Of a stretch of 64,000 bases of DNA, positions 1 to 53,186 are shown piece after piece. The position numbers were made by a program, and so were the translations under genes. Source of the DNA: Magallana gigas (taxonomy: Eukaryota); contig NC_088854.1 in assembly GCF_963853765.1 (NCBI RefSeq), forward strand, positions 8,432,001-8,496,000, in the 5' to 3' direction. The notes beneath the pieces are model-generated. The model did no database searches. It saw only the letters and a program-made list of their open reading frames with translations, and had not been told where the DNA came from. Position 1 is the first letter of the stretch, and each line of letters begins with the position of its first letter.

Positions 1-340
1 GTCCTCGCGCAAAAGAAAATTTTCTTATATTTGTTGCATAATGGTATGCCACACATATATACATGTGCATCAGATACATTGTATATCCAGTCTGGCGAGC
101 ACCTGTCCTTGTTCGCCTGGTCAGCTGGAGATGTCTATCTCTCAGTTCTCTTTGTTCCTGTAGATGTATCTGCTGATCAACCTTTACATACAGCCGACCT
201 GTGCAATGTCTTCCGTTCTCTACACGTGACGTCGATTACTGTCAAAAGAAGACCTCCAACTCCAGGAAGGGCTTAACAGGAAACAACGATCTATCGCAAA
301 AAACAATGCCATAGGTCCGGTGGCAAGCTGCTGTGTATTG

Positions 341-2121
341 ATGGAGGAGGACTTTGTCACCAAACTGCTCCGGAACTCGGGAAATTCCGCTCCGGACCAA
401 CAAAATCGAGGAGCGTCCGGAAACACTTCTGCTACTGGCCCTTATCAGAACCTGAGAGTTCCGGAAGTGTCAGGATTGTGGGATTCGACCATCGACCTCT
501 CACGGAGTCATGATGCAACGACTACAAAAACCGCTCAGGTTTGTTCACTTGTTATCTTTAAACACCATTATACAAATCAAAGATATTGATAGAAGTGAGT
601 AAAATTAATTATAAAAGTTGAATGTAGCTTTAAACAGATGCTCAATTACAAATGGTACTCGTACTGAAAAATGCATCTTATCGATGCAATTACAGAGTTG
701 CAAAGAGTTTCGAAGTTAGCAATGCTAGTAAGCATTAGTGCCGTCAAAAGAACGAACACAGAATTATCTTCACTTGAAGTTCTGCTTCAGAAGAATGTGT
801 TTGAATTGCTTGTTTACTAGTCTATATCAAATTAAATAAATTGAATTTTAAAAGAACTAATTGTTAAGATTTTATCAAACAAGCAATGAGCAAAAAACGT
901 TGAAGAAACCGTCGGTTTTTTATGATATAGAGTTAATCTAGTATAGGTCGTGCAGTTTTCTGCACCGAAGACCCCATGCTGTATTGGGAGGATGTGTCCA
1001 GATTGCTCCAAACGTCAAGTTTAACGGCGTCTATGTGGAAGTTTAAGGTGATTGACATCGTTTGACATTGCTTATATACAGAACTTGGCCTTTGAGGATC
1101 AATATTACAGACTTGTAGACTTCTTCTGATCTGACGATGATCAATGTGGTACATGTAATTGATATTACATATGTGGCACGCGGCTTAATGAAGGCATCTC
1201 AACACAACTCTGCGCCCCTGAAAGCATGCACATGCTGCTATACAGTTCATCATTACTTGTTTCAGGAGAAGGAGAGGAAAATCAAACCTTTTACAAAACA
1301 TAAAACATTTGCTTGTTTTTATAGACCTACACTTTCAGGTTTTTTCCCAAAATATAAATGTTCTCTGTCGATTTACTGTTCATGTTTTTTTGCTATAGTT
1401 TGGAAAACCAATGAAAATTATAAGAGAAATTTCATTATTTATATACTAGAAACAAAAAACCATGAGATCATTTGTTTTGAACATTTATTATTTAAAATAA
1501 TAATGATGGTTTTGCAGAATTGCAAAACCGTGTAATGTGAACCGATATTGCTTGCAGAGGTGATTGTATATATTACGGGTTAATGTTCGTGTTAACGGGA
1601 CGTTGGCAACAGGTGGCAACAATCAGTATAAACAACAACAAAAATCGGCAACTTGGTTTGCACCAAAACGTTATATGGTTAAATATGGTTGTTTTCTCTT
1701 GGAGGTGGTATATTATCCTTTCCTATTTCTTGAATAAGATCTATGCTCGTATCTTGGTACTCTATAAACTTTTAGAAAATCAATTACCATAAGGGGTGCT
1801 GCAATGTGTTTGTACAACCCACCTCTCGACGTTTTGAAATTACATTTAGTTTACTTCTAGAAAATTAGAGTATTTTCTTAACCGACACTTGAGGAGCACT
1901 GAGTACTTTTGATCTTTTACTTGTTGAGAGTACCACACGTACACATGGGTCACTAAATTCCAAGCAGTCCATGACCACTAGATCTTTATTGTATGTTTCA
2001 GCCCCGCTGGATGGAGGATACAGAGTATGCTGTGATGGCCTACAGTATCTACGGCTGTATTCTCTTGGTTCTCGCTTGTGTTGTAACAGCACTTCTGGTC
2101 GTGTATGGAAATATGAGATAG
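341..2121 (+). CDS. Small tail-anchored membrane protein, paralog A (~105 aa, unknown family); coding exons 341-538 and 2002-2121
   Basis: Exon 1 MEEDFVTKLLRNS...KTAQ ends at CAG|GTTTGT (phase 0). The acceptor TGTTTCAG| at 2001 opens PRWMEDTEYAVMAYSIYGCILLVLACVVTALLVVYGNMR* (a hydrophobic C-terminal helix). Both exons align with the exons of paralog B at 3183-6078. The second exon is in a different frame from the supplied 1971..2339 ORF. Confidence 0.72.
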
Positions 2122-3182
2122 GCTGCAAAACGCGTGTTTTCTCCATAAAACGGTTTGACACAACCCAGGTGCCAGAGAACTTCCTTGTCACGTGGAAAAG
2201 ACTAAAGCAAAATAACCTACCTCCTCTGAAGAATGAAACAATCACGTTATATACCAATGTCATATATATATATTTGTACATGTATACATATATACTTATT
2301 ATTTTGAGTACAATAAATGTTTTCAAAAACGAAATGTAGTTGATGTCAAATATTGGTCTCGATGGGTTTCTTGGTGGATAAAGAATAGATGGTTTACACT
2401 CTGCGCTAATCAAAGAGGTACAAAACAAGACACGAAATGCTAAAACTGTTTAATCTACGATACAGAAGAGTTCCTGATTGTCAGAAACAAACGAACATTG
2501 AATTTAAAGAAGGTCTTAATGAGAAAATGTTATAAAGTGTTTGCCGGCGGTCTCTCCAAGACTTGTGGACAAAGCGAGGCGGACTATGGCCAGTTTTACG
2601 GTATTTGGGCTGTAAACGAAAATACCACTGGGATAGGAAATTAAACTTTGAAATTATCATTTCCTTGGAGCACAGCCAGGGCATAAACAACAAATATAAA
2701 CCAAGAATAAAGATGCAAATAATTCATTGATTTTGGCAGGCAGTTAAAAATCGTTTGTACGAAGCTCGGGCGGCCGTCTTAATTCCACTGATTCCCCCGA
2801 AAATCTCCCTGTCTTAGTGATTACACAGGGGTTAGATCCATCACGGATAAGCGGTAAGTATATCATATATTTGTACAGCTCTTGTGTGTATTGATCCATT
2901 GACAATTGCAGTTGCTTATGATTATTGAATATGTCAACAGTGAAACCAGTTTACTTATTGGGATAGTCCAAGTCCGGATGACAAACCAGCGGAAAGATGG
3001 AAGTTTATGTTTTCTACCACCCAGGAGCAAATTAGTAAAGATTAAATAGAGAATCACTATAATACCGCAACCATCGCTCGTATATTCTAAGAATTCTGTA
3101 AACGTTGAGTTTGACTTCAGTCCCCGATTGTGGTTGGATTTTAAGGTGAACATGTATAGTGCCCATTAGATTAGGCTGTACA

Positions 3183-6078
3183 ATGGAATCTAATGGTGAG
3201 GTCCCGGAAGAAGACTTTATAGCGACACTTCTGAAACAATCGTCTGGAGTGTCACATGTCAACAAGGCGTATTCCACGACACCGACAGGAACTTCCGGTC
3301 CCCCGGATCTTGTCAGAAATTGCCACCACCAAGTTAGACACAATGGTCACCACCACGGAGGTAACCACGTGACGATATTGGCCCCCAAGGACAATGCCAG
3401 CCCCCACGCTAGTCACTCAAGTCTGACGGTGAGTAGCTTTCAGTTTTCCATGACTTGTGAGATGCAACGTTTCTTTACGGTATGAAATGTACCTAGTGTA
3501 TGATTTTATAATGTATTGATTTAAGGTGGCTCTATACACCACTTTTTGATGACGCAGTACGCAAAAAAGTAAATCTGGAAGCATGCAATCCCGGTACTGG
3601 CTGATTTAAACTGAGGCGAATTGTATGGGGACCGCTCTTTTGAAAAAATTGTTAAATGAATAGGTTTAATTTGATAATTTAAAAATTCATTACTTACAAG
3701 TAATGTGGTACGTGACACCTTCACGTTGTTTGGTATTTTTATCAAAATAAACAATAAAATCAACTATAATAATTTCTTTCCCATCATCGATATGTTACAC
3801 CGTAGCGCAGTGGGTTAACGGGTTCACTACAAATCTGTAGGTCATGAGTTCGATCTCCGTTGAGAACAATTTTTTAAGACATTTTTTAACTGTACAAGAT
3901 TTTCTAAAACGTATGTTTTAGTTAAAAACTGTGAGAGAAAATTCTAAACCGGTGAAAATATTTCAATTATAATACACTTTAATGCACATTAATATCGACA
4001 CCTTAAGGGTATGGGGGTTGCTTTGAATTTCTCTCAGGTTGGGATATATAAATCCTATTAGCCAAGTCAATTTTCCCCTTTATTCATATGACTTAGTTTT
4101 GCATTTAAGCGAATATATTCATTTATACATGCCTATAATGAAATATGTATGTATTTATCATTCCAACATTATATTTAGGAAATTTTCTTCAACCCAAAAA
4201 TGAAAAGTCCCCAAGGTGTTTGGGCCTTGGGACTTAGGAACGATAACCCTTATCTGAGGAACTTTCATACTAAATAAAATTTAAAATATTTTTTTTATTT
4301 ATTTGCAATGATTTTCATTCAATTTTTTATGTCACATTTATTAAAGTACATTTTCTTAAAACATCAAGCAACTTTTTCAGATGATTTGTCAATAGAGTAA
4401 GAAAATATGAAAAATTATGTTTTGGGGAAATACTAAAAAAAATTGCAATAATAACATTTTTGAATGTTAAGAAGTGTTATATATTTTTTTATGTGTCCGA
4501 AGGCAATATCCATCATATGATAAAAAAATTCTCTCAATTTGTTAATAGCTGTCTTTTTAAAAAATATTTTACAAAAACACAAAAAAACATTAAAAAATTC
4601 TTTAAAAATACATATAGTATCCCTATCATCATTTTAATATTTGATAAGTATATGTTTTGTGATCTTCTATTGATAATTGGAATAAACTGTGGGTGTATAG
4701 AGCCACCTTAATAATTTTATGTAACTTTTGTTTATCATTATCTTAAACGATATCTCACCAAGATATCCCCCACTCATATAACATTGTTCGATCGGTTCAT
4801 GTTCTTTAATTAGGAGAGATGTAACAGGTAATTATCTGCGATAGTCACTTTTGCTGCTTTTGTGCGGATTGAAAATTCCTTGTGTTGGGGGGGGGGGGGG
4901 GGGGGGTTAGTTTGGGTTAACCGAGCCTCCAGCTATCTTCGGCTTCAGGTGGGTGTGTCTTCTAGTGTAAACACATCTTAGTTGATGTTGGGATAAAAGA
5001 TGATAATTGAAAACAGAGTTGGAGGCATAAGAGAATGGACTTTCGAACCGAATACACATGTACATTGTACTTGTATAATTACCTTCAGGATATATTTTAT
5101 CCCGTAAAAATGAAATTATTCATTCATTCATTTTTTGTCAAAGTAAAACGTTGGCTGTTGTCTAAGAACAATTTTCTTGACTCTATATAACCATTAATGT
5201 ACATGTACATGTATAGTAATCAATCGACTTTCCTTTCTGTCAACAAACATGATTGGACACTCTAAATGCTTGTGTAATTTATATAAACGTTAATGGACCC
5301 ATTGGCAAATCCGAAAGGTCTTTAATAATTGTTTGGACATTTTTGTAAGCTTCGGAATTTATTCATTTTGCTAAAGATTCTGTAACATTTATTCAAAATT
5401 GTTAAAATATCCCGGAATCGAGAACGTGAGACAGACTATAGACATTTTCAACAGTTGCTAAAATTCACCGCCTCGCAAAAACACTTTTTAACAACACTTG
5501 CAATATATTAATAATATGGATATGAATGATCATAGTATATTTGCCGTTTCTTTAAATTATCATTATTATTACCATTTACAATTTTTACATTTTTTGGCTA
5601 AGTATTAATTGTGTGAGATTAATCAATATCAAGTAAGGAATAAAAAAATAGATTTCATAATACGCTGTACATGTATCCTTAGACAAACAGATGAAATTAC
5701 TAATACATGTAGAGTGTATCTATGTACCTTGGTTAAAGCATTGAGATTGATTGCTATACTTTCATTTTTATGTCTGTTCATATGTAACACTATAGATTCT
5801 CAATCAATATTTAATCTCAGATCAATGATAAGAACCTGCCCAAGACAATCCAAATTAGAATATCCACTCCAAGGGTCCTCGCAACAGTTATAACTCACAA
5901 TTAATGTTTCATCGACGGTTAAAAATAAATTTCTTAAGTGGTTCATAGTAATTTGTATTTCTTTCAGGATCCCTTGTTGGATGACAAAGTTTATTCAGCT
6001 CTAGCTTACGGCATGTACGGTCTACTATTGTTTATCCTTACCATGGTAACGACAATTTGCTTGATTGTATTCACGTGA
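3183..6078 (+). CDS. Small tail-anchored membrane protein, paralog B (~118 aa, unknown family); coding exons 3183-3428 and 5968-6078; probable non-coding exon ending 2853
   Basis: Exon MESNGEVPEEDFIATLLKQ...SHSSLT ends at ACG|GTGAGT (phase 0). The acceptor TTTCTTTCAG| at 5967 opens DPLLDDKVYSALAYGMYGLLLFILTMVTTICLIVFT*. There is an upstream donor GCG|GTAAGT at 2853/2854 and AG acceptors just before the ATG. AATAAA occurs at 6177 and 6510. Confidence 0.75.
3525..4707. mobile_element. Non-autonomous DNA transposon, Kolobok-like (TTAA TSD, 16-bp TIRs), 1183 bp
   Basis: TTAA(3521-3524)-GGTGGCTCTATACACC(3525-3540) ... GGTGTATAGAGCCACC(4692-4707)-TTAA(4708-4711). No transposase ORF. TTAA TSD with purine-purine termini is the Kolobok signature, whereas piggyBac termini start CC. 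Confidence 0.8.
3700..4004. mobile_element. Degenerate ~300-bp MITE with a tRNA-derived core, nested in the 3525-4707 element
   Basis: It shares blocks with the copies at 34390 and 63274: a TIR-like start (TAATGTGGTACGTGACACC), AAATAAACAATAAAATCAA, and CACATTAAT near the end. It has a Pol III A-box-like TAGCGCAGTGG (3803-3813) and a B-box-like GAGTTCGATCTC (3846-3857). Confidence 0.6.
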
Positions 6079-6625
6079 ATTACCCCGTTTTCTCATTACA
6101 AAATCATCAACATGAGGAAATTAATTTCATGGCATCGTGATATTTCCTTTAACTCCTTACTCAGATCACGAAGAAAAATAAATCGGATTTTCCAATTCTA
6201 CACGCAATGGCAAAAGTCATTGTACCATCGATTCGGGATCAATGACAGCATACCTAGTGCAAAAGAAACTCTGGACAACCTTTACAAATCTGCAGAAACC
6301 GCCTGTCTTGGCGGAAAAAACATCCAAAGATATGTTCCCTAATTCTATTCAAAGGTACAACAATGCGGTGTAATGTGCTATACTGGAATGAGAAATGCTG
6401 GATCTGAATAGGTTTACTTAAACGGGTTTTTTGCTGGAACTTTTAAGTGAAAGACTGCTTAGAAACTGTCAGAAACGGTCCTTTAAACAATGCTTTATTT
6501 TTATTTGTTAATAAAGAAATATTTTACTTGATTTGTTTTGTTTGAAATTTAAGTAAGATCAATGTCTTCCTTTTTAAATTAACATATGATAGGAAACCAG
6601 TCAGTCACTTTATAATGTATCTGTA

Positions 6626-9600
6626 TTAATCGTCGACGTCCGAGGTTTCTTCTTCCGCTTGATCCTCGCCAAACTCGGCATCAAATTCCTTATCAGCAAG
6701 CGCAGCTTTAAATGCCGATTCCTCTTCCGGTGAAGGGTCATCAGCCTCGGTGATTTCCGGTCCACTAGGGAATTCTTCCATAACATCCGGTGGGATTTCA
6801 GGTTCGAAAGCTCCACCTAGATTCTTTTGCCCCCAGCCAATGTATAACGATGTAAAGTATCTACAGAAGAATTTTGATTACTTTACTATGATATCACGTA
6901 CTATATTAGAACGCCATGAAAGATGTTTGACATAATCATGTGTTCAGTACGTCTAATACAAGTGTCGATTTTTCACAGAACTGACCTCCCTCTCTCGGCC
7001 CCAAACGTCCACGAACCTGGCCATGTGTTGGACTGAAGCATTGCTACAGCAAACTCCGGCACTAGTCGCGAGGAAATACGCGGAATCCAGGCAGGCGAAT
7101 CATGTACAGCTTAAATAATGAAGGAAAAATCTTACAAACCAAACACATATACATGATCTTAAGATCTAAAAAAAAATCACAAACAAAAGTACGTTGGTCT
7201 TCCGAGACAGGTGTTAGCAATGGCGGTCCAACTTCCGGCTCTGGTTCATCCGGTTCATTTCGTTCCTCCTCATCAGAATCCTCCTCACCACCTTCACCGG
7301 ACTTTCCTTCCATTGGGTTAAACCACGTGTTTCTACCCTACAGGTATATAGACATTACATTATATACTTTTTCTATTCCATAAATAGTTCAAGGGGAGGG
7401 GAAGGTGGGTCGTAACATACCTGTGGTAAGACGGACTGCATGTGGTGGCACCAGGTCTGTCCTGTAGGGTCACAGAGGTCACGCAGGGGCATTCCCTCAA
7501 ATTCCTGGTCTATGATACAAGTGTTCCTACCGTTTGATCCTGAAACATATTTGTAGGTACGGCACTTAACGTTAATATTTTACACTTATATATTGTAAAT
7601 AGTAGCTGCAAAACTGTTTCTCTTCATGAACAGTCGGGTGGACAAAGCGTATAGCTACAGTACAACTCTCTATAAATTTGAATTTACATGCTATATACAT
7701 GTAATTTGAAATCAATACATTGGTACACTTGTAAAACAACTTGTGTCTTAAATTGGAAATTCGCCACTCACAGCAAGATTGTTAAAAAATATCTGAACCT
7801 GATTCTTCTGCATCTTCCTCTTCTTCATTGTCGTCAAACCGGAAATAGCCTATTGGTGATACCGTTGTGGCTGCGCTAATACGTGCAATTTGCGCACGCA
7901 ATAAGTTCTTTTCCAGACCGGGAAATGGAGGATGACTCACAATCTGTTTTATTAAGAAAAACGTTAATACCTTAATTTGTTTGCAAATTCATCAATATCA
8001 AACAAAAAAATCAGAGAGTGGCGGAGCGATTATTTGAGCATGTTTCAGAAATCCAAGGAGTCTTACGTGTTCACCAAGGTCCCCAGTAAAGAACCGCCTG
8101 ATCTTGCGGGCCGCGACGATCTGCGCAGGATTTATGTGTGGAAGTCTTATCCAGGGTAATCCAGCTGAAACCATTGAAATCAAATATTGTTCAGAGCTTT
8201 AGAATAGTAAAACATTATATTCAAAATGAAACAAATCACGCCTGGAGACAAGCCTTAGATCTGCAAACCCATGAGGCACGGAATGATAATTATTCCTTTA
8301 AAATATATGTTGGAATAGAGTTGCAACATTGCTGTAAATTGAAATGACAAATTGTACACTACAGCCAAATACAGTTGAACCTAATAATGAGAAAGGAAAA
8401 AACCCAATAAATATGAGTAAATGCGCATATACCTTTTATTTTTTAATTGTACTTTGATATGCGTAAGAAATGTCAGCTTTGAGTTTTGCTGTGATCTTAT
8501 AATGCATGTATCAAGAATGTATCGTTATCTATGCAGCAATCATTAAAATGTTATTTTCTTTCATACAGAATTGAAGGATGGTGATGAGAATGTGATTTGA
8601 TAGATTTCTTTTTGATAATACTTACGTTCATTGCAGACAAAGTACACATGCTTGTTCAGTCCGGTTCCCATACTTTCGCAAGGAATTCTGGGAGGTGGTT
8701 TATAAAACGGTTTAATTTCATCTGTGACTGTCGTCGATTCATCTAAAAAACGGCCATACACAGCAAAGTCAGACATCGATACCATATATATTTATAGTAT
8801 TAAATGGCGTCTTTGGTAATTACATATGGTTCTATACCTAGTATGCTTGTATGACATCTCTTCATTGAATATGAATTGGCGTCTACGGTTACCGGAACTA
8901 TATCTTGCATATATTTTTTCACTTGATTTTAAAAAGCTATTGGCAGTTAATTGTGAATGTAATGTCTACCACAGTAAAATACTCAGTTTGTTGCAGTTTT
9001 CTGATTGATGAAGACATCAAACTCCAGAATGACGTCATTCGATTTCATTGAGATTGATGTTCAAGAACGCGAGTATAGCGATGATGAAAACCGACAAAAC
9101 GTGTGGTAAAGTAAATCATTCATCAAGTGCCAAGAAAAAAAAAACCCGCATGCCTTTTGTTTTGTTAAATCTTCCTAGCACGTATATTATACAATCAATA
9201 CATATAAACAAAGCTTTCAGATGGCTTATCTTCTTGTTCGAACGTATTGCGTGAGAACATCTTGCAAAAATAAACGTTACCAAAACAATTCTAGCATATT
9301 TATATACGGTCATACATACCATCAAAAATCATGCTATCCTCAATCTTGAAATCATCAAAAAAATAATTGAATTAAAACATGTTTTGTGTGTCAATGGAAG
9401 AATTTTGGATACATTCCCTAATGTCTAATTCAATTTTAATAACAGTCTCCCCCTACTTCAATCTCAGCATTCATTAACATGTTCATTAAAATCAGTTAAG
9501 ATTTGAAGGCGGGTGTTGCAAAGAGATTTATCTCTCTATTTGTAAACAATATTTTATTTACACTACTATGACCGTGATGCTGTAATTTCTTTAAAATTTT

Positions 9601-52118: not shown

Positions 52119-53186
52119 TTATTGACATTTACACAAGCTGAGGATATCGGCACGAAACTTCATGTCAAAATACCCGTATATGATTGGGTTAATCACGTGA
52201 TTAATGACGTAGAATCTCTGCAAGATGAAGAAGACAATCATCTCAGCAGCTGAGATGTTGTACCAGAGTTCCGGCGAAAGTTTGCTTATAATAAGAAAAA
52301 TACACGTCGGCGTATAGGAGATTAAATAACACACAATAATGGCGAAGAACATCATGTTAAAGTTAATTTTGCTTTCTTTGAATGTCCGCGACCTGGAAAA
52401 GTCTTTAGTGCTGCTTTGACTGGGTTTGTTGTCAGACAGGGAGTCAAACTGGAGGGAGGGAAGGTCGACACTCTGCCGCTGGCGAGCCTTCCGGAGCTTG
52501 TTGTGGCGGTAGATGACGACTCCGATCGGAATGTAGAGGAAACCCACAGTCAGAATGTTAATTATCATGAGAATAAAGATGATGTAGTAGTATATCGCCT
52601 CGTAGGTAGGGTAGTTCCCTGCCCCCGTGAAACACGTCAACCCTGTGACGTTCTCCCCCTCAAACACTCCCTCCACTCTCATGTTCCCAGAAAACAGCAA
52701 AACCGGAGCTGAATACAAGATAGAAAATCCTACAATTATTCCCAGACATAGCTTTCTTTTGCTCTCGTTCATTTGCTTCCCGAGTGGTTTGCAGATCTTT
52801 AGATACCTCTGAACGGCTATGGCTATCAGCAGCAAGGCCGAGAGGCCCGAAGTCGCCGTCATGGTGTATAACATCCCCTTACAGAGTCCGGACGATGGAA
52901 AATCCACGAAGTACATGGACTCGAACACGTAAAAAACGGAAGCCACGGTGCTTGCAAGGAGATCGAAAACGGCTAAGATGGGTATAAAGTAGCGGTCATC
53001 CCGACTTGCCTTCATCCGTAAAATGTACACAAGAAGCACTAAAATGTTCCCTACCAGTCCAACGAAGCAAACAATTGCCTGGAATACAACCGTGGGTAAA
53101 AGTTTGTCGGCATAGTCAGAGTTCCACCGCAGAGTGAGGTTATTGGTTTCATCCATTTTGTATTCCAATATTGAAATATTGTTCAT
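52119..53186 (-). CDS. Intronless orphan class A (rhodopsin-like) GPCR, 355 aa (may start at the second Met, 53156)
   Basis: Seven hydrophobic segments: GN in TM1 (GLVGNILV), LAVFDLL in TM2, C..AVQRYLKIC in TM3 (DRY variant), P in TM4, ECL2 Cys, ISYTP in TM6 and NPIIY in TM7. There are N-terminal NxS/T sites. The ligand cannot be assigned from the sequence. Confidence 0.92.
   Translation of the reverse strand: MNNISILEYKMDETNNLTLRWNSDYADKLLPTVVFQAIVCFVGLVGNILVLLVYILRMKASRDDRYFIPILAVFDLLASTVASVFYVFESMYFVDFPSSGLCKGMLYTMTATSGLSALLLIAIAVQRYLKICKPLGKQMNESKRKLCLGIIVGFSILYSAPVLLFSGNMRVEGVFEGENVTGLTCFTGAGNYPTYEAIYYYIIFILMIINILTVGFLYIPIGVVIYRHNKLRKARQRQSVDLPSLQFDSLSDNKPSQSSTKDFSRSRTFKESKINFNMMFFAIIVCYLISYTPTCIFLIISKLSPELWYNISAAEMIVFFILQRFYVINHVINPIIYGYFDMKFRADILSLCKCQ

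What the first reader, a model, noticed from the sequence alone, without database searches (positions are those of the whole stretch)
341..6078. Hidden tandem pair of paralogous tail-anchored microproteins with a conserved EEDFxxxLL N-terminal motif
Seen in the sequence: two adjacent genes share the same architecture (ATG exon, phase-0 intron, short last exon). The last exons align without gaps: PRWMEDTEYAVMAYSIYGCILLVLACVVTALLVVYG vs DPLLDDKVYSALAYGMYGLLLFILTMVTTICLIVFT (D..Y...AY..YG, then ~18 hydrophobic residues, then a stop 0-3 residues later). The first exons share EEDFVTKLLRNS / EEDFIATLLKQS, with synonymous differences (GAG GAG GAC TTT vs GAA GAA GAC TTT), while the middles diverge into low-complexity Ser/Gly/His-rich linkers. 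The ORF track misses both last exons. Established knowledge: no signal peptide plus a C-terminal TM helix is the tail-anchored topology (GET/EMC or mitochondrial insertion). Inference: this is a small, possibly undescribed family of organelle-anchored adaptors in which an acidic amphipathic N-terminal motif recruits a partner. I do not recognise the family.
Basis: partly seen in the sequence, partly recalled or inferred. Interest (0 to 1): 0.78.

Follow-up and report, generated by a model that had tools for sequence, protein, structure and literature searches.

The report
Oyster-only pair of tail-anchored small proteins
Two neighbouring Pacific-oyster genes really do encode small, related, evolutionarily constrained proteins with a shared N-terminal EEDFxxxLL helix and a membrane anchor at the very C-terminus. 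They belong to no described family, are found only in oysters, and their function is unknown.

Summary
Both gene models are real. Intron-less transcript contigs from three studies carry the joint 538^2002, and contigs from two studies carry 3428^5968.

The two proteins (105 and 118 aa) are paralogs: BLASTP E=5e-10, and their last exons are reciprocal best hits in the 564-Mb genome, which has no third copy. The tandem pair, its exon structure and a flanking radial-spoke gene are conserved in Saccostrea echinata. The tandem order is also seen in a Crassostrea virginica-like contig. dN/dS is about 0.07-0.12.

AlphaFold2 gives the same layout for both: a short N-terminal helix over the motif, about 50-60 disordered residues, and one long C-terminal helix. 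The anchor is very hydrophobic and is followed by 0-5 residues, which fits tail-anchored insertion, more likely into the ER than into mitochondria.

Pfam, PDB and two very large protein searches found relatives only in oysters.

"Hidden" is only partly right. Gene 1 is already annotated as an uncharacterized protein (M. gigas LOC105327461, UniProt K1QE84), and gene 2's ortholog is annotated in S. echinata. The adaptor function remains an untested inference. Overall this is a sound but modest finding: a lineage-restricted orphan family within a known topological class.

The parts
198..538 (+). Gene 1 first exon: 5'UTR (transcript reaches at least ~198) and CDS 341-538 (66 codons)
   Evidence: X1 contig covers 281-534 with 83 further letters upstream; donor GT at 539.
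344..370 (+). Gene 1 N-terminal motif EEDFVTKLL (residues 2-10)
   Evidence: Invariant MEEDFV..LLRNS in four taxa. AF2 helix 4-14 at modest confidence (mean pLDDT 64 for residues 1-10, 54 for 11-20).
539..2001 (+). Gene 1 intron, phase 0, GT..AG
   Evidence: joint 538^2002 in contigs of X1, X2 and X3. Zero depth inside the intron.
2002..2330 (+). Gene 1 last exon: CDS 2002-2121 (juxtamembrane helix, TM helix, tail NMR, TAG) and 3'UTR. Transcript contigs reach 2259; the end near 2330 is inferred from AATAAA at 2313-2318.
   Evidence: TM 19-mer KD mean 2.91. AF2 helix 68-104, pLDDT 78-95.
2469..2765 (+). Conserved non-coding block over the gene-2 promoter and 5'UTR exon
   Evidence: blastn to S. 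echinata 75% over 318 nt, E 6e-52. Three-genus alignment with near-invariant runs. No Rfam hit and only a weak consensus fold.
2600..2853 (+). Gene 2 non-coding first exon (5' end not defined; at least from 2600)
   Evidence: X1 contig 2600-2852 and X3 contig 2676-2852, joined to 2940/2941.
2854..2940 (+). Gene 2 5'UTR intron (87 nt, GT..AG); its 3' half is conserved
   Evidence: joint in X1 and X3.
2941..3428 (+). Gene 2 second exon: 5'UTR with upstream ATGs (2978, 3151) and CDS 3183-3428 (82 codons)
3207..3233 (+). Gene 2 motif EEDFIATLL (residues 9-17)
   Evidence: PE(E)DFI.TLLKQS conserved in four taxa. AF2 helix 8-22 in the ortholog.
3429..5967 (+). Gene 2 coding intron, phase 0, GT..AG; holds a 1191-bp repeat element at 3521-4711
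   Evidence: joint 3428^5968 in X1 and X3; 20-nt perfect inverted ends.
5968..6479 (+). Gene 2 last exon: CDS 5968-6078 (juxtamembrane helix, TM helix, TGA straight after the helix) and 3'UTR to at least ~6479 (AATAAA at 6510-6515)
   Evidence: the X1 1254-nt contig runs 209 nt past 6270. KD mean 2.51. AF2 helix 88-117 in the ortholog.

Best explanation
These are two separately transcribed, protein-coding paralogs of the Pacific oyster (Magallana gigas). They form a two-member family that was found only in oysters.

Each protein has three parts:
- a short acidic amphipathic helix (EEDF[VI]xxLL[RK][NQ]S) at or near the N-terminus;
- a disordered linker of about 50-60 residues carrying paralog-specific short conserved motifs;
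- one long C-terminal helix, with a conserved juxtamembrane part (D..Y...AY..YG) running straight into a very hydrophobic transmembrane segment that ends 0-5 residues before the stop.

With no signal peptide, and with the anchor still inside the ribosome at termination, they must be inserted after translation as tail-anchored proteins with the N-terminus in the cytosol. The high anchor hydrophobicity and near-neutral tail make the ER, via the GET/TRC40 route, the most likely target.

Most likely they act as membrane-tethered adaptors or small regulatory subunits. The shared N-terminal helix would dock a common cytosolic partner. The sequence-conserved membrane helix would engage a membrane partner or self-associate. 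The different linkers would give the two paralogs different regulation.

Shown here: gene structure, transcription, paralogy, purifying selection and predicted architecture. Inferred: topology, target membrane and adaptor role.
For: **Transcription and splicing**
- Intron-less contigs carry joints 538^2002, 3428^5968 and 2853^2941, with no depth in unique intron sequence.

**Identity of the genome and gene 1**
- The M. gigas contig recorded for XP_065930914.1 has the same length as the window's contig, 61,469,542 bases.
- Gene 1 is LOC105327461 / K1QE84, annotated as uncharacterized.

**Paralogy**
- BLASTP E=5e-10.
- Reciprocal best genome hits and no third copy.

**Conservation across oysters**
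- The tandem pair, the two coding exons with a phase-0 intron, and the flanking radial-spoke gene are kept in S. echinata.
- Gene-1 last exon and gene-2 first coding exon lie 1.2 kb apart on a C. virginica-like contig.
- GT and CAG splice signals sit at the same positions in other taxa.
- Only exons, plus one non-coding block, align between genera.

**Selection**
- dN/dS is 0.088 and 0.122 against Saccostrea, and 0.07-0.10 per exon against the C. virginica type.

**Architecture**
- AF2 gives helix 4-14, disorder, helix 68-104 (pLDDT 78-95) for gene 1. For the gene-2 ortholog it gives helix 8-22, disorder, helix 88-117 (pLDDT 92-96).
- The anchor has KD mean 2.3-2.9, the tail is 0-5 residues with at most one basic residue, and there is no hydrophobic N-terminus.
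- The anchor sequence is almost unchanged among gene-1 orthologs. Ten positions are invariant across both paralogs.
- Each paralog has its own conserved linker motifs.
Against: - There is no experimental localisation, partner or phenotype, and no protein-level evidence.
- The three transcript runs are only guessed to be RNA by the index, although contigs that skip GT..AG introns can hardly be DNA.
- The one raw poly(A) RNA run, sampled at about 1 in 100, had no reads on the exons.
- The N-terminal helix has only modest model confidence: mean pLDDT 64 for gene-1 residues 1-10 and 73 for gene-2 ortholog residues 11-20.
- The motif matches no docking motif that I could test.
- Invariant anchor positions do not line up on one helix face significantly (permutation p about 0.08).
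- dS is saturated between genera, so dN/dS values are rough.
- Gene 2's leader carries several upstream ATGs, which may keep translation low.
Confidence: 0.6

Rival explanations
1. Mitochondrial (or peroxisomal) outer-membrane tail-anchored proteins, as the reader also proposed. The N-terminal motif would recruit a cytosolic factor to that organelle.
For: The tail-anchored layout is the same. Gene 1 has one basic residue in its tail: NMR in Magallana, GKN in Saccostrea.
Against: - Anchor hydrophobicity is high (KD mean 2.3-2.9).
- Gene 2 has no residue, or only uncharged ones, after the helix.
- From general knowledge of TA targeting, mitochondrial and peroxisomal anchors are less hydrophobic and are flanked by more basic residues. 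This rule is statistical, comes from yeast and mammals, and was not tested here.
Confidence: 0.15
2. The membrane helix is the working part. The proteins would be small transmembrane regulators of a pump, channel or other membrane complex, working like phospholamban/sarcolipin-type micropeptides. The cytosolic part would only tune that regulation.
For: - The anchor is unusually sequence-conserved for a mere anchor: YSIYGCILLVLACVVTALLVV is nearly identical in Magallana, the C. virginica type and Saccostrea.
- Y, G, L, L, T, L, V positions are invariant across paralogs.
- dN/dS of the last exon is 0.08-0.09.
- AF2 models one continuous helix of 30-37 residues.
Against: - No sequence similarity to any such family: Pfam scans returned only three or four sub-threshold chance matches, none to a regulin family.
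- The equally conserved N-terminal motif argues for a second, cytosolic function.
- Conserved positions are not significantly confined to one helix face.
Confidence: 0.2
3. Transcribed but not functionally translated loci, meaning lineage-specific non-coding RNAs with chance ORFs.
For: - No protein evidence exists.
- Gene 2's leader has upstream ATGs at 2713, 2978 and 3151.
- No spliced Magallana gene-2 protein was returned from the public collections.
Against: - dN/dS is about 0.1 with saturated dS in both genes and both coding exons.
- Frame, length, phase-0 intron position and stop position are kept across genera.
- The paralogs keep protein-level motifs while their codons differ.
Confidence: 0.04

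Closest known systems
Tail-anchored (TA) membrane proteins as a topological class (for example Sec61 beta, cytochrome b5, and SNAREs such as syntaxins)
   Same: No signal peptide, a single hydrophobic helix at the extreme C-terminus, the cytosolic part towards the N-terminus, and a very short luminal tail. Like syntaxins, gene 1 has a conserved peptide at the very N-terminus as well as the C-terminal anchor.
   Different: No sequence relation to any TA family in Pfam. There is no SNARE or other folded domain; everything between the two helices is predicted disordered. The class is a topology, not a homologous family.
Phospholamban / sarcolipin / regulin-type micropeptides
   Same: Small, single-pass, C-terminally anchored proteins whose membrane helix is itself strongly conserved. 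The genes are short and easily missed.
   Different: These oyster proteins are two to three times longer. They have a long disordered cytosolic part and a distinct N-terminal motif, and hmmscan returned no match to a regulin family. No link to a pump is known.
Consortin C-terminus (Pfam PF15281), the best Pfam near-hit
   Same: Weak match over the transmembrane stretch only (12-13.5 bits).
   Different: Far below the curated cut-off of 30 bits, seen for gene 1 only, and confined to hydrophobic residues. I treat it as compositional.
RefSeq/UniProt 'uncharacterized protein' entries: M. gigas LOC105327461 (K1QE84), C. angulata LOC128192965, C. virginica LOC111127073, S. echinata LOC133179138 and LOC133179137
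   Same: These are the same genes or their orthologs. The M. gigas entry matches the window's gene-1 translation in alignment A1.
   Different: The records carry no family, domain or function. The paralogy, the shared motif and the TA layout are not annotated. No paper in the searchable library mentions these identifiers.

Membership tests
Tail-anchored protein (topological class) | Single transmembrane helix within about 30 residues of the C-terminus | tested here: met
   Best 19-mers at residues 82-100 of 105 and 100-118 of 118; 5 and 0 residues follow. AF2 helices 68-104 and 88-117.
Tail-anchored protein (topological class) | No N-terminal signal peptide or other hydrophobic segment | tested here: met
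   The highest 9-residue KD mean in the first 30 residues is 0.13-0.87. The N-terminal part is acidic (net charge -3 to -6) and 46-52% S/T/G/P/N/Q/H. No dedicated signal-peptide predictor was available.
Tail-anchored protein (topological class) | Post-translational insertion (GET/TRC40, EMC or unassisted) with the N-terminus in the cytosol | not testable with these tools
   Follows from the position of the helix by established knowledge. It needs an in-vitro insertion assay.
Phospholamban/sarcolipin-type regulators | Sequence match to the family models | tested here: not met
   hmmscan against Pfam-A at E up to 10 returned no such family for exons or full-length proteins.
Sec61 beta / SNARE / BNIP3 and other Pfam TA families | Sequence match to the family models | tested here: not met
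   Only chance-level hits (T2SSF, Consortin_C, EMP24, ANAPC1), all far below their cut-offs. No significant PDB relative: the best E-values were 0.65 and 0.98.
Consortin C-terminus (PF15281) | Score at or above the gathering cut-off of 30 bits | tested here: not met
   13.5 and 12.1 bits, over the TM stretch only.
The oyster EEDFxxxLL / AYxxYG family proposed here | N-terminal EEDF[VI]xxLL motif, plus D..Y...AY..YG juxtamembrane motif and terminal TM helix encoded by a separate last exon after a phase-0 intron | tested here: met
   Both window genes and their orthologs in S. echinata. For the C. virginica type, a third taxon from one sequencing study, and a metagenome contig, only single exons are available.

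The most novel reading that the evidence does not exclude
The pair defines a new, oyster-born adaptor system. The EEDFxxxLL helix would be a previously undescribed docking motif that brings one cytosolic partner to the ER or endomembranes. The conserved membrane helix would let the two paralogs pair with each other or with a membrane complex, and the paralog-specific linkers (the WDSxxD block in gene 1; the NKAYSTTP, RxNGH and ASPHASHLSLT blocks in gene 2) would act as separate regulatory inputs.
Probability: 0.25. Interest if true: 0.5.

Novelty: new member of a known kind. Interest (0 to 1): 0.3.

Why it matters
The finding shows that a careful reading of raw sequence can recover small multi-exon genes that ORF-based tracks miss. 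It also links two records that databases hold only as unrelated "uncharacterized proteins" into one family with a clear two-module design.

If the motif and the anchor each have a partner, the pair would be a compact example of how a lineage-specific membrane adaptor arises and sub-functionalises after tandem duplication.

Without localisation, expression pattern or partners it remains one of many orphan families in molluscan genomes, so its present weight is modest.

Tried and rejected
- **Complex prediction** on the two last-exon peptides as a heterodimer: score 0.07, verdict "no answer". This is neither for nor against binding.
- **ESM Atlas feature searches**. Best scores were 0.79-0.82, which is chance level. 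Both paralogs touched the same unnamed-family arthropod cluster labelled "Plekhm3 protein", but no sequence is returned, so the lead could not be tested. The search restricted to named clusters gave nothing.
- **Pfam** and **PDB profile search**: only chance hits.
- **phmmer** of gene 1 against 1.84 billion representatives and a **word-indexed profile search** of both paralogs. Only oyster sequences scored, apart from two low-complexity or repeat hits (P0014, P0016) that I judged spurious.
- **Helix-face test** of invariant positions: p about 0.08, with a stronger peak at 140 degrees. I therefore do not claim a conserved helix face.
- **Raw poly(A) RNA run X21**: no reads on the exons at about 1% sampling. 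This is uninformative.
- **Rfam and RNAalifold** on the conserved 5' block: nothing convincing.
- **Upstream search**: 10 kb upstream of the window holds no further paralog and no sequence alignable to the S. echinata locus.
- **Motif comparison from memory**: I compared the motif with acidic dileucine, LIR, FFAT, the AP2 beta-appendage FxxFxxxR motif and the syntaxin N-peptide. None fits both paralogs. These comparisons are recollections, not tests.
- **Not attempted**: I did not type the spliced Magallana gene-2 protein into an exact-sequence look-up, because it has no reference. Its absence from annotation is therefore suggested, not shown.
- **Literature**: no paper mentions the gene identifiers or the run accessions. 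General searches gave nothing relevant.
- **Earlier findings of this scan**: nothing.

Full report
**1. What is in the sequence**

- Gene 1 starts at ATG 341. It has a 66-codon exon ending at 538 before GT, an acceptor CAG ending at 2001, and a 39-codon last exon with TAG at 2119-2121.
- Gene 2 starts at ATG 3183. It has an 82-codon exon ending at 3428 before GTGAGT, an acceptor CAG ending at 5967, and a 36-codon last exon with TGA at 6076-6078.
- Both introns are in phase 0.
- The shared motif is encoded with different codons: GAG GAG GAC TTT in gene 1 and GAA GAA GAC TTT in gene 2.

**2. Are the genes transcribed and spliced as proposed?**

Twenty public runs hold part of the stretch. Fourteen hold about a fifth of its words, which is roughly the share expected if only the exons are present.

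I laid three such runs from three studies, plus one raw RNA run.
- Contigs skip 538^2002 in X1, X2 and X3.
- Contigs skip 3428^5968 in X1 and X3.
- All skipped stretches have GT..AG ends, and there is no depth in unique intron sequence.
- The index only guesses that these runs are RNA. Contigs that lack the introns cannot come from genomic DNA, so I treat them as transcripts.

Gene 2 has a non-coding first exon (at least 2600-2853) joined to 2941 across an 87-nt GT..AG intron.
- The gene-2 contig in X1 is 1254 nt long and runs about 209 nt beyond 6270.
- Gene 1's mRNA reaches from at least ~198 to at least 2259, with AATAAA at 2313-2318.

The two genes are therefore separate short transcripts. 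Gene 1's polyadenylation signal lies about 280 bp before the first transcribed base seen for gene 2.

Two caveats apply. X2 alone shows an alternative joint 538^947, with only 26 letters on the shorter side. The raw poly(A) run, sampled at about 1 in 100, had no reads on the exons, which says little.

**3. Whose genes are they?**

A search with gene 1's first exon returned full-length 105-aa proteins from Crassostrea angulata and Saccostrea echinata.
- The cluster listing shows that the same protein is Magallana (Crassostrea) gigas XP_065930914.1 / LOC105327461 / UniProt K1QE84, annotated as uncharacterized.
- Its contig length of 61,469,542 equals that of the window's contig. The window is therefore M. 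gigas, and gene 1 is already annotated.
- C. virginica LOC111127073 is the orthologue. It is annotated with an upstream in-frame start.

For gene 2, the only full-length spliced protein returned is S. echinata LOC133179137 (P0020; P0006 is 96% identical to it).
- All Magallana and C. virginica-type entries for gene 2 are unspliced ORF calls that run into the intron.
- So "hidden" is wrong for gene 1. It may be right for gene 2 in Magallana.
- No paper in the library mentions any of these identifiers.

**4. Paralogy**
- Gene 1 against the gene-2 orthologue P0006 gives BLASTP E=5e-10, with 30% identity over the full length. The matches are concentrated in the motif and the last exon.
- In six-frame searches of the whole 564-Mb assembly, each last exon finds the other as its best non-self hit.
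- A profile of seven last exons finds these two (E 1e-23 and 1e-17) and nothing else below E about 1.
- The whole gene-2 orthologue finds no further locus.
- Ten kilobases upstream hold no extra copy.

The family has exactly two members in this genome.

**5. Conservation**

The S. echinata locus has the gene-1 orthologue, then the gene-2 orthologue on the same strand, then a radial-spoke gene on the opposite strand.
- The window shows the same order. The ORF at 6626-6781 on the minus strand weakly matches the C-terminal end of the Pfam Radial_spoke model (13.7 bits, below the 25.7-bit cut-off), and further exons of this gene align with the S. echinata locus.
- Exon sizes (67+38 and 82+36 codons) and the phase-0 intron are kept.

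Other taxa add to this.
- A C. virginica-like contig carries gene 1's last exon 1.2 kb upstream of gene 2's first coding exon.
- Both paralogs also occur in runs of one sequencing study from a third, unidentified taxon.
- A gene-1 last exon occurs on a metagenome contig.
- Splice signals sit at the same positions in all of these.

Between Magallana and Saccostrea only the exons and one non-coding block align at the DNA level.

Nei-Gojobori estimates give:
- dN/dS 0.088 (gene 1) and 0.122 (gene 2) against Saccostrea;
- 0.07-0.10 per exon against the C. virginica type;
- 0.2-0.33 for the first coding exons between Saccostrea and the third taxon.

dS is at or near saturation (0.9-3.4), so the ratios are rough. 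They are nevertheless clearly well below 1.

**6. Architecture**

AlphaFold2 with small family alignments gives the same picture for both paralogs.
- Gene 1: helix 4-14 (mean pLDDT 64 for residues 1-10), no confident structure for 15-67, then one helix 68-104 (pLDDT 78-95).
- Gene-2 orthologue: helix 8-22 (mean pLDDT 73 for residues 11-20), disorder, then helix 88-117 (pLDDT 92-96).

The conserved D..Y...AY..YG stretch is thus a cytosolic extension of the membrane helix.
- The most hydrophobic 19-mers have Kyte-Doolittle means of 2.3-2.9.
- They are followed by 0-5 residues with at most one basic residue.
- The first 30 residues contain no hydrophobic segment.
- The N-terminal parts are acidic and rich in S/T/G/P/N/Q/H.

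By established knowledge, a helix this close to the stop is still inside the ribosomal tunnel at termination. Insertion must therefore be post-translational, and the proteins are tail-anchored. High hydrophobicity and a nearly uncharged tail are the usual marks of ER-directed (GET/TRC40) clients rather than mitochondrial or peroxisomal ones. This rule comes from my own knowledge of yeast and mammalian work and is not tested here.

**7. What is conserved, and what that suggests**

Among gene-1 orthologues the invariant blocks are MEEDFV..LLRNS and PE.SG.W.S..D.

Among gene-2 orthologues they are PE(E)DFI.TLLKQS, SH.NKAY..TP, R.NGH and KD..ASP.ASH.SLT.
- The linkers are therefore not just low-complexity spacers. 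Each carries its own short conserved motifs.
- The His-rich run of the Magallana copy is a local expansion around the conserved R.NGH.

In the last exon, ten positions are invariant across both paralogs and all taxa (P, D, three Y, three L, T, V), with G nearly so. The gene-1 anchor is almost unchanged between genera. That is more sequence constraint than a passive anchor needs, so the helix probably contacts something specific.

I tested whether the invariant positions fall on one helix face and obtained p about 0.08. I do not claim a conserved face. A heterodimer prediction of the two last-exon peptides gave no verdict.

**8. Comparison with what is known**
- Pfam returns only sub-threshold, compositional matches: Consortin_C at 12-13.5 bits against a cut-off of 30, plus T2SSF, EMP24 and ANAPC1.
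- A PDB profile search returns nothing meaningful.
- phmmer of gene 1 against 1.84 billion representatives finds only oyster sequences, apart from two hits I judged to be repeat or low-complexity matches.
- The profile search of both paralogs finds only oyster sequences among 5874 candidates.
- Language-model look-alikes are at chance level.

The proteins therefore belong to the tail-anchored class by topology but to no described homologous family. Functionally, the nearest analogies are membrane-tethered adaptors with a terminal docking peptide, and small transmembrane regulators whose helix is the active part. Neither is a membership claim.

**9. Verdict**

- a third exon for gene 2;
- synteny across oyster genera;
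- purifying selection on both genes;
- exactly two copies in the genome.

- The genes, the paralogy and the tail-anchored layout stand.
- "Hidden" holds at most for gene 2 in Magallana.
- ER is more likely than mitochondria.
- The adaptor role is a reasonable but untested inference.
- The known range is oysters only.

This is a new, small, lineage-restricted family within a known kind of protein. It is interesting mainly as a clean example of a missed or unlinked small-gene pair.

Noticed in passing
window 2469-2765 and 2900-2940: A non-coding block over gene 2's promoter/5'UTR exon, plus the 3' half of the 87-nt leader intron, is better conserved between oyster genera than the coding exons. 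It is 75% identical over 318 nt to S. echinata (E 6e-52). It contains a near-invariant run around 2703-2745 with an octamer-like ATGCAAAT. There is no Rfam hit and only a weak consensus fold. The small uORF in it is not conserved as a peptide.
   Followed up: partly
window 3521-4711: A 1191-bp repeat element inside gene 2's coding intron has perfect 20-nt inverted ends that begin and end in TTAA (TTAAGGTGGCTCTATACACC ...). It has very high depth, with many loose ends at 3520 and 4711, in all four runs. It is therefore a multi-copy, probably non-autonomous DNA transposon. It holds a tRNA-like stretch near 3795-3860 that ARAGORN does not call as a tRNA.
   Followed up: partly
window 538 to 947: An alternative joint 538^947 (GT..AG) is seen in one run only (X2), with 26 letters on the shorter side. 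Read in frame, it would give a gene-1 isoform of 66+25 residues without the membrane helix.
   Followed up: no
window 6626-8744, minus strand: A radial-spoke-head gene (weak Pfam Radial_spoke match at its acidic C-terminal end, 13.7 bits) lies tail-to-tail with gene 2. Seven blocks at 6627-8744 align with the S. echinata locus, so synteny is conserved.
   Followed up: partly
window 52119-53186, minus strand: A single-exon 355-aa ORF is a rhodopsin-family GPCR (Pfam 7tm_1, E 9.4e-28).
   Followed up: partly
window 4887-4906: A run of 20 G lies inside gene 2's intron, just downstream of the repeat element.
   Followed up: no
window 3006-3133 and 3013: The contig of run X3 differs from the window at 16 listed positions in gene 2's 5'UTR and carries an 18-nt insertion after 3013. 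The contig of X1 matches the window at all but one of those positions. The leader therefore seems to have strongly divergent alleles or strains.
   Followed up: no
proteins P0046-P0048 (Logan calls over window 5938-6400): Some public gene calls read gene 2's TGA stop as W and continue for about 100 residues into the 3'UTR. This is a gene-caller code artefact, not a longer protein.
   Followed up: no
L035 4906-5292 (G000:C2:8426906-8427292), about 5 kb upstream of the window: A 129-aa ORF has an N-terminal hydrophobic leader and a Tyr/Gly/Pro/Ser-rich body. It looks like a secreted low-complexity (matrix-like) protein.
   Followed up: no
window 306-314: A two-codon upstream ORF (ATG CCA TAG) sits 27 nt before gene 1's start codon. 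The start itself has a weak -3 context (T) with G at +4.
   Followed up: no
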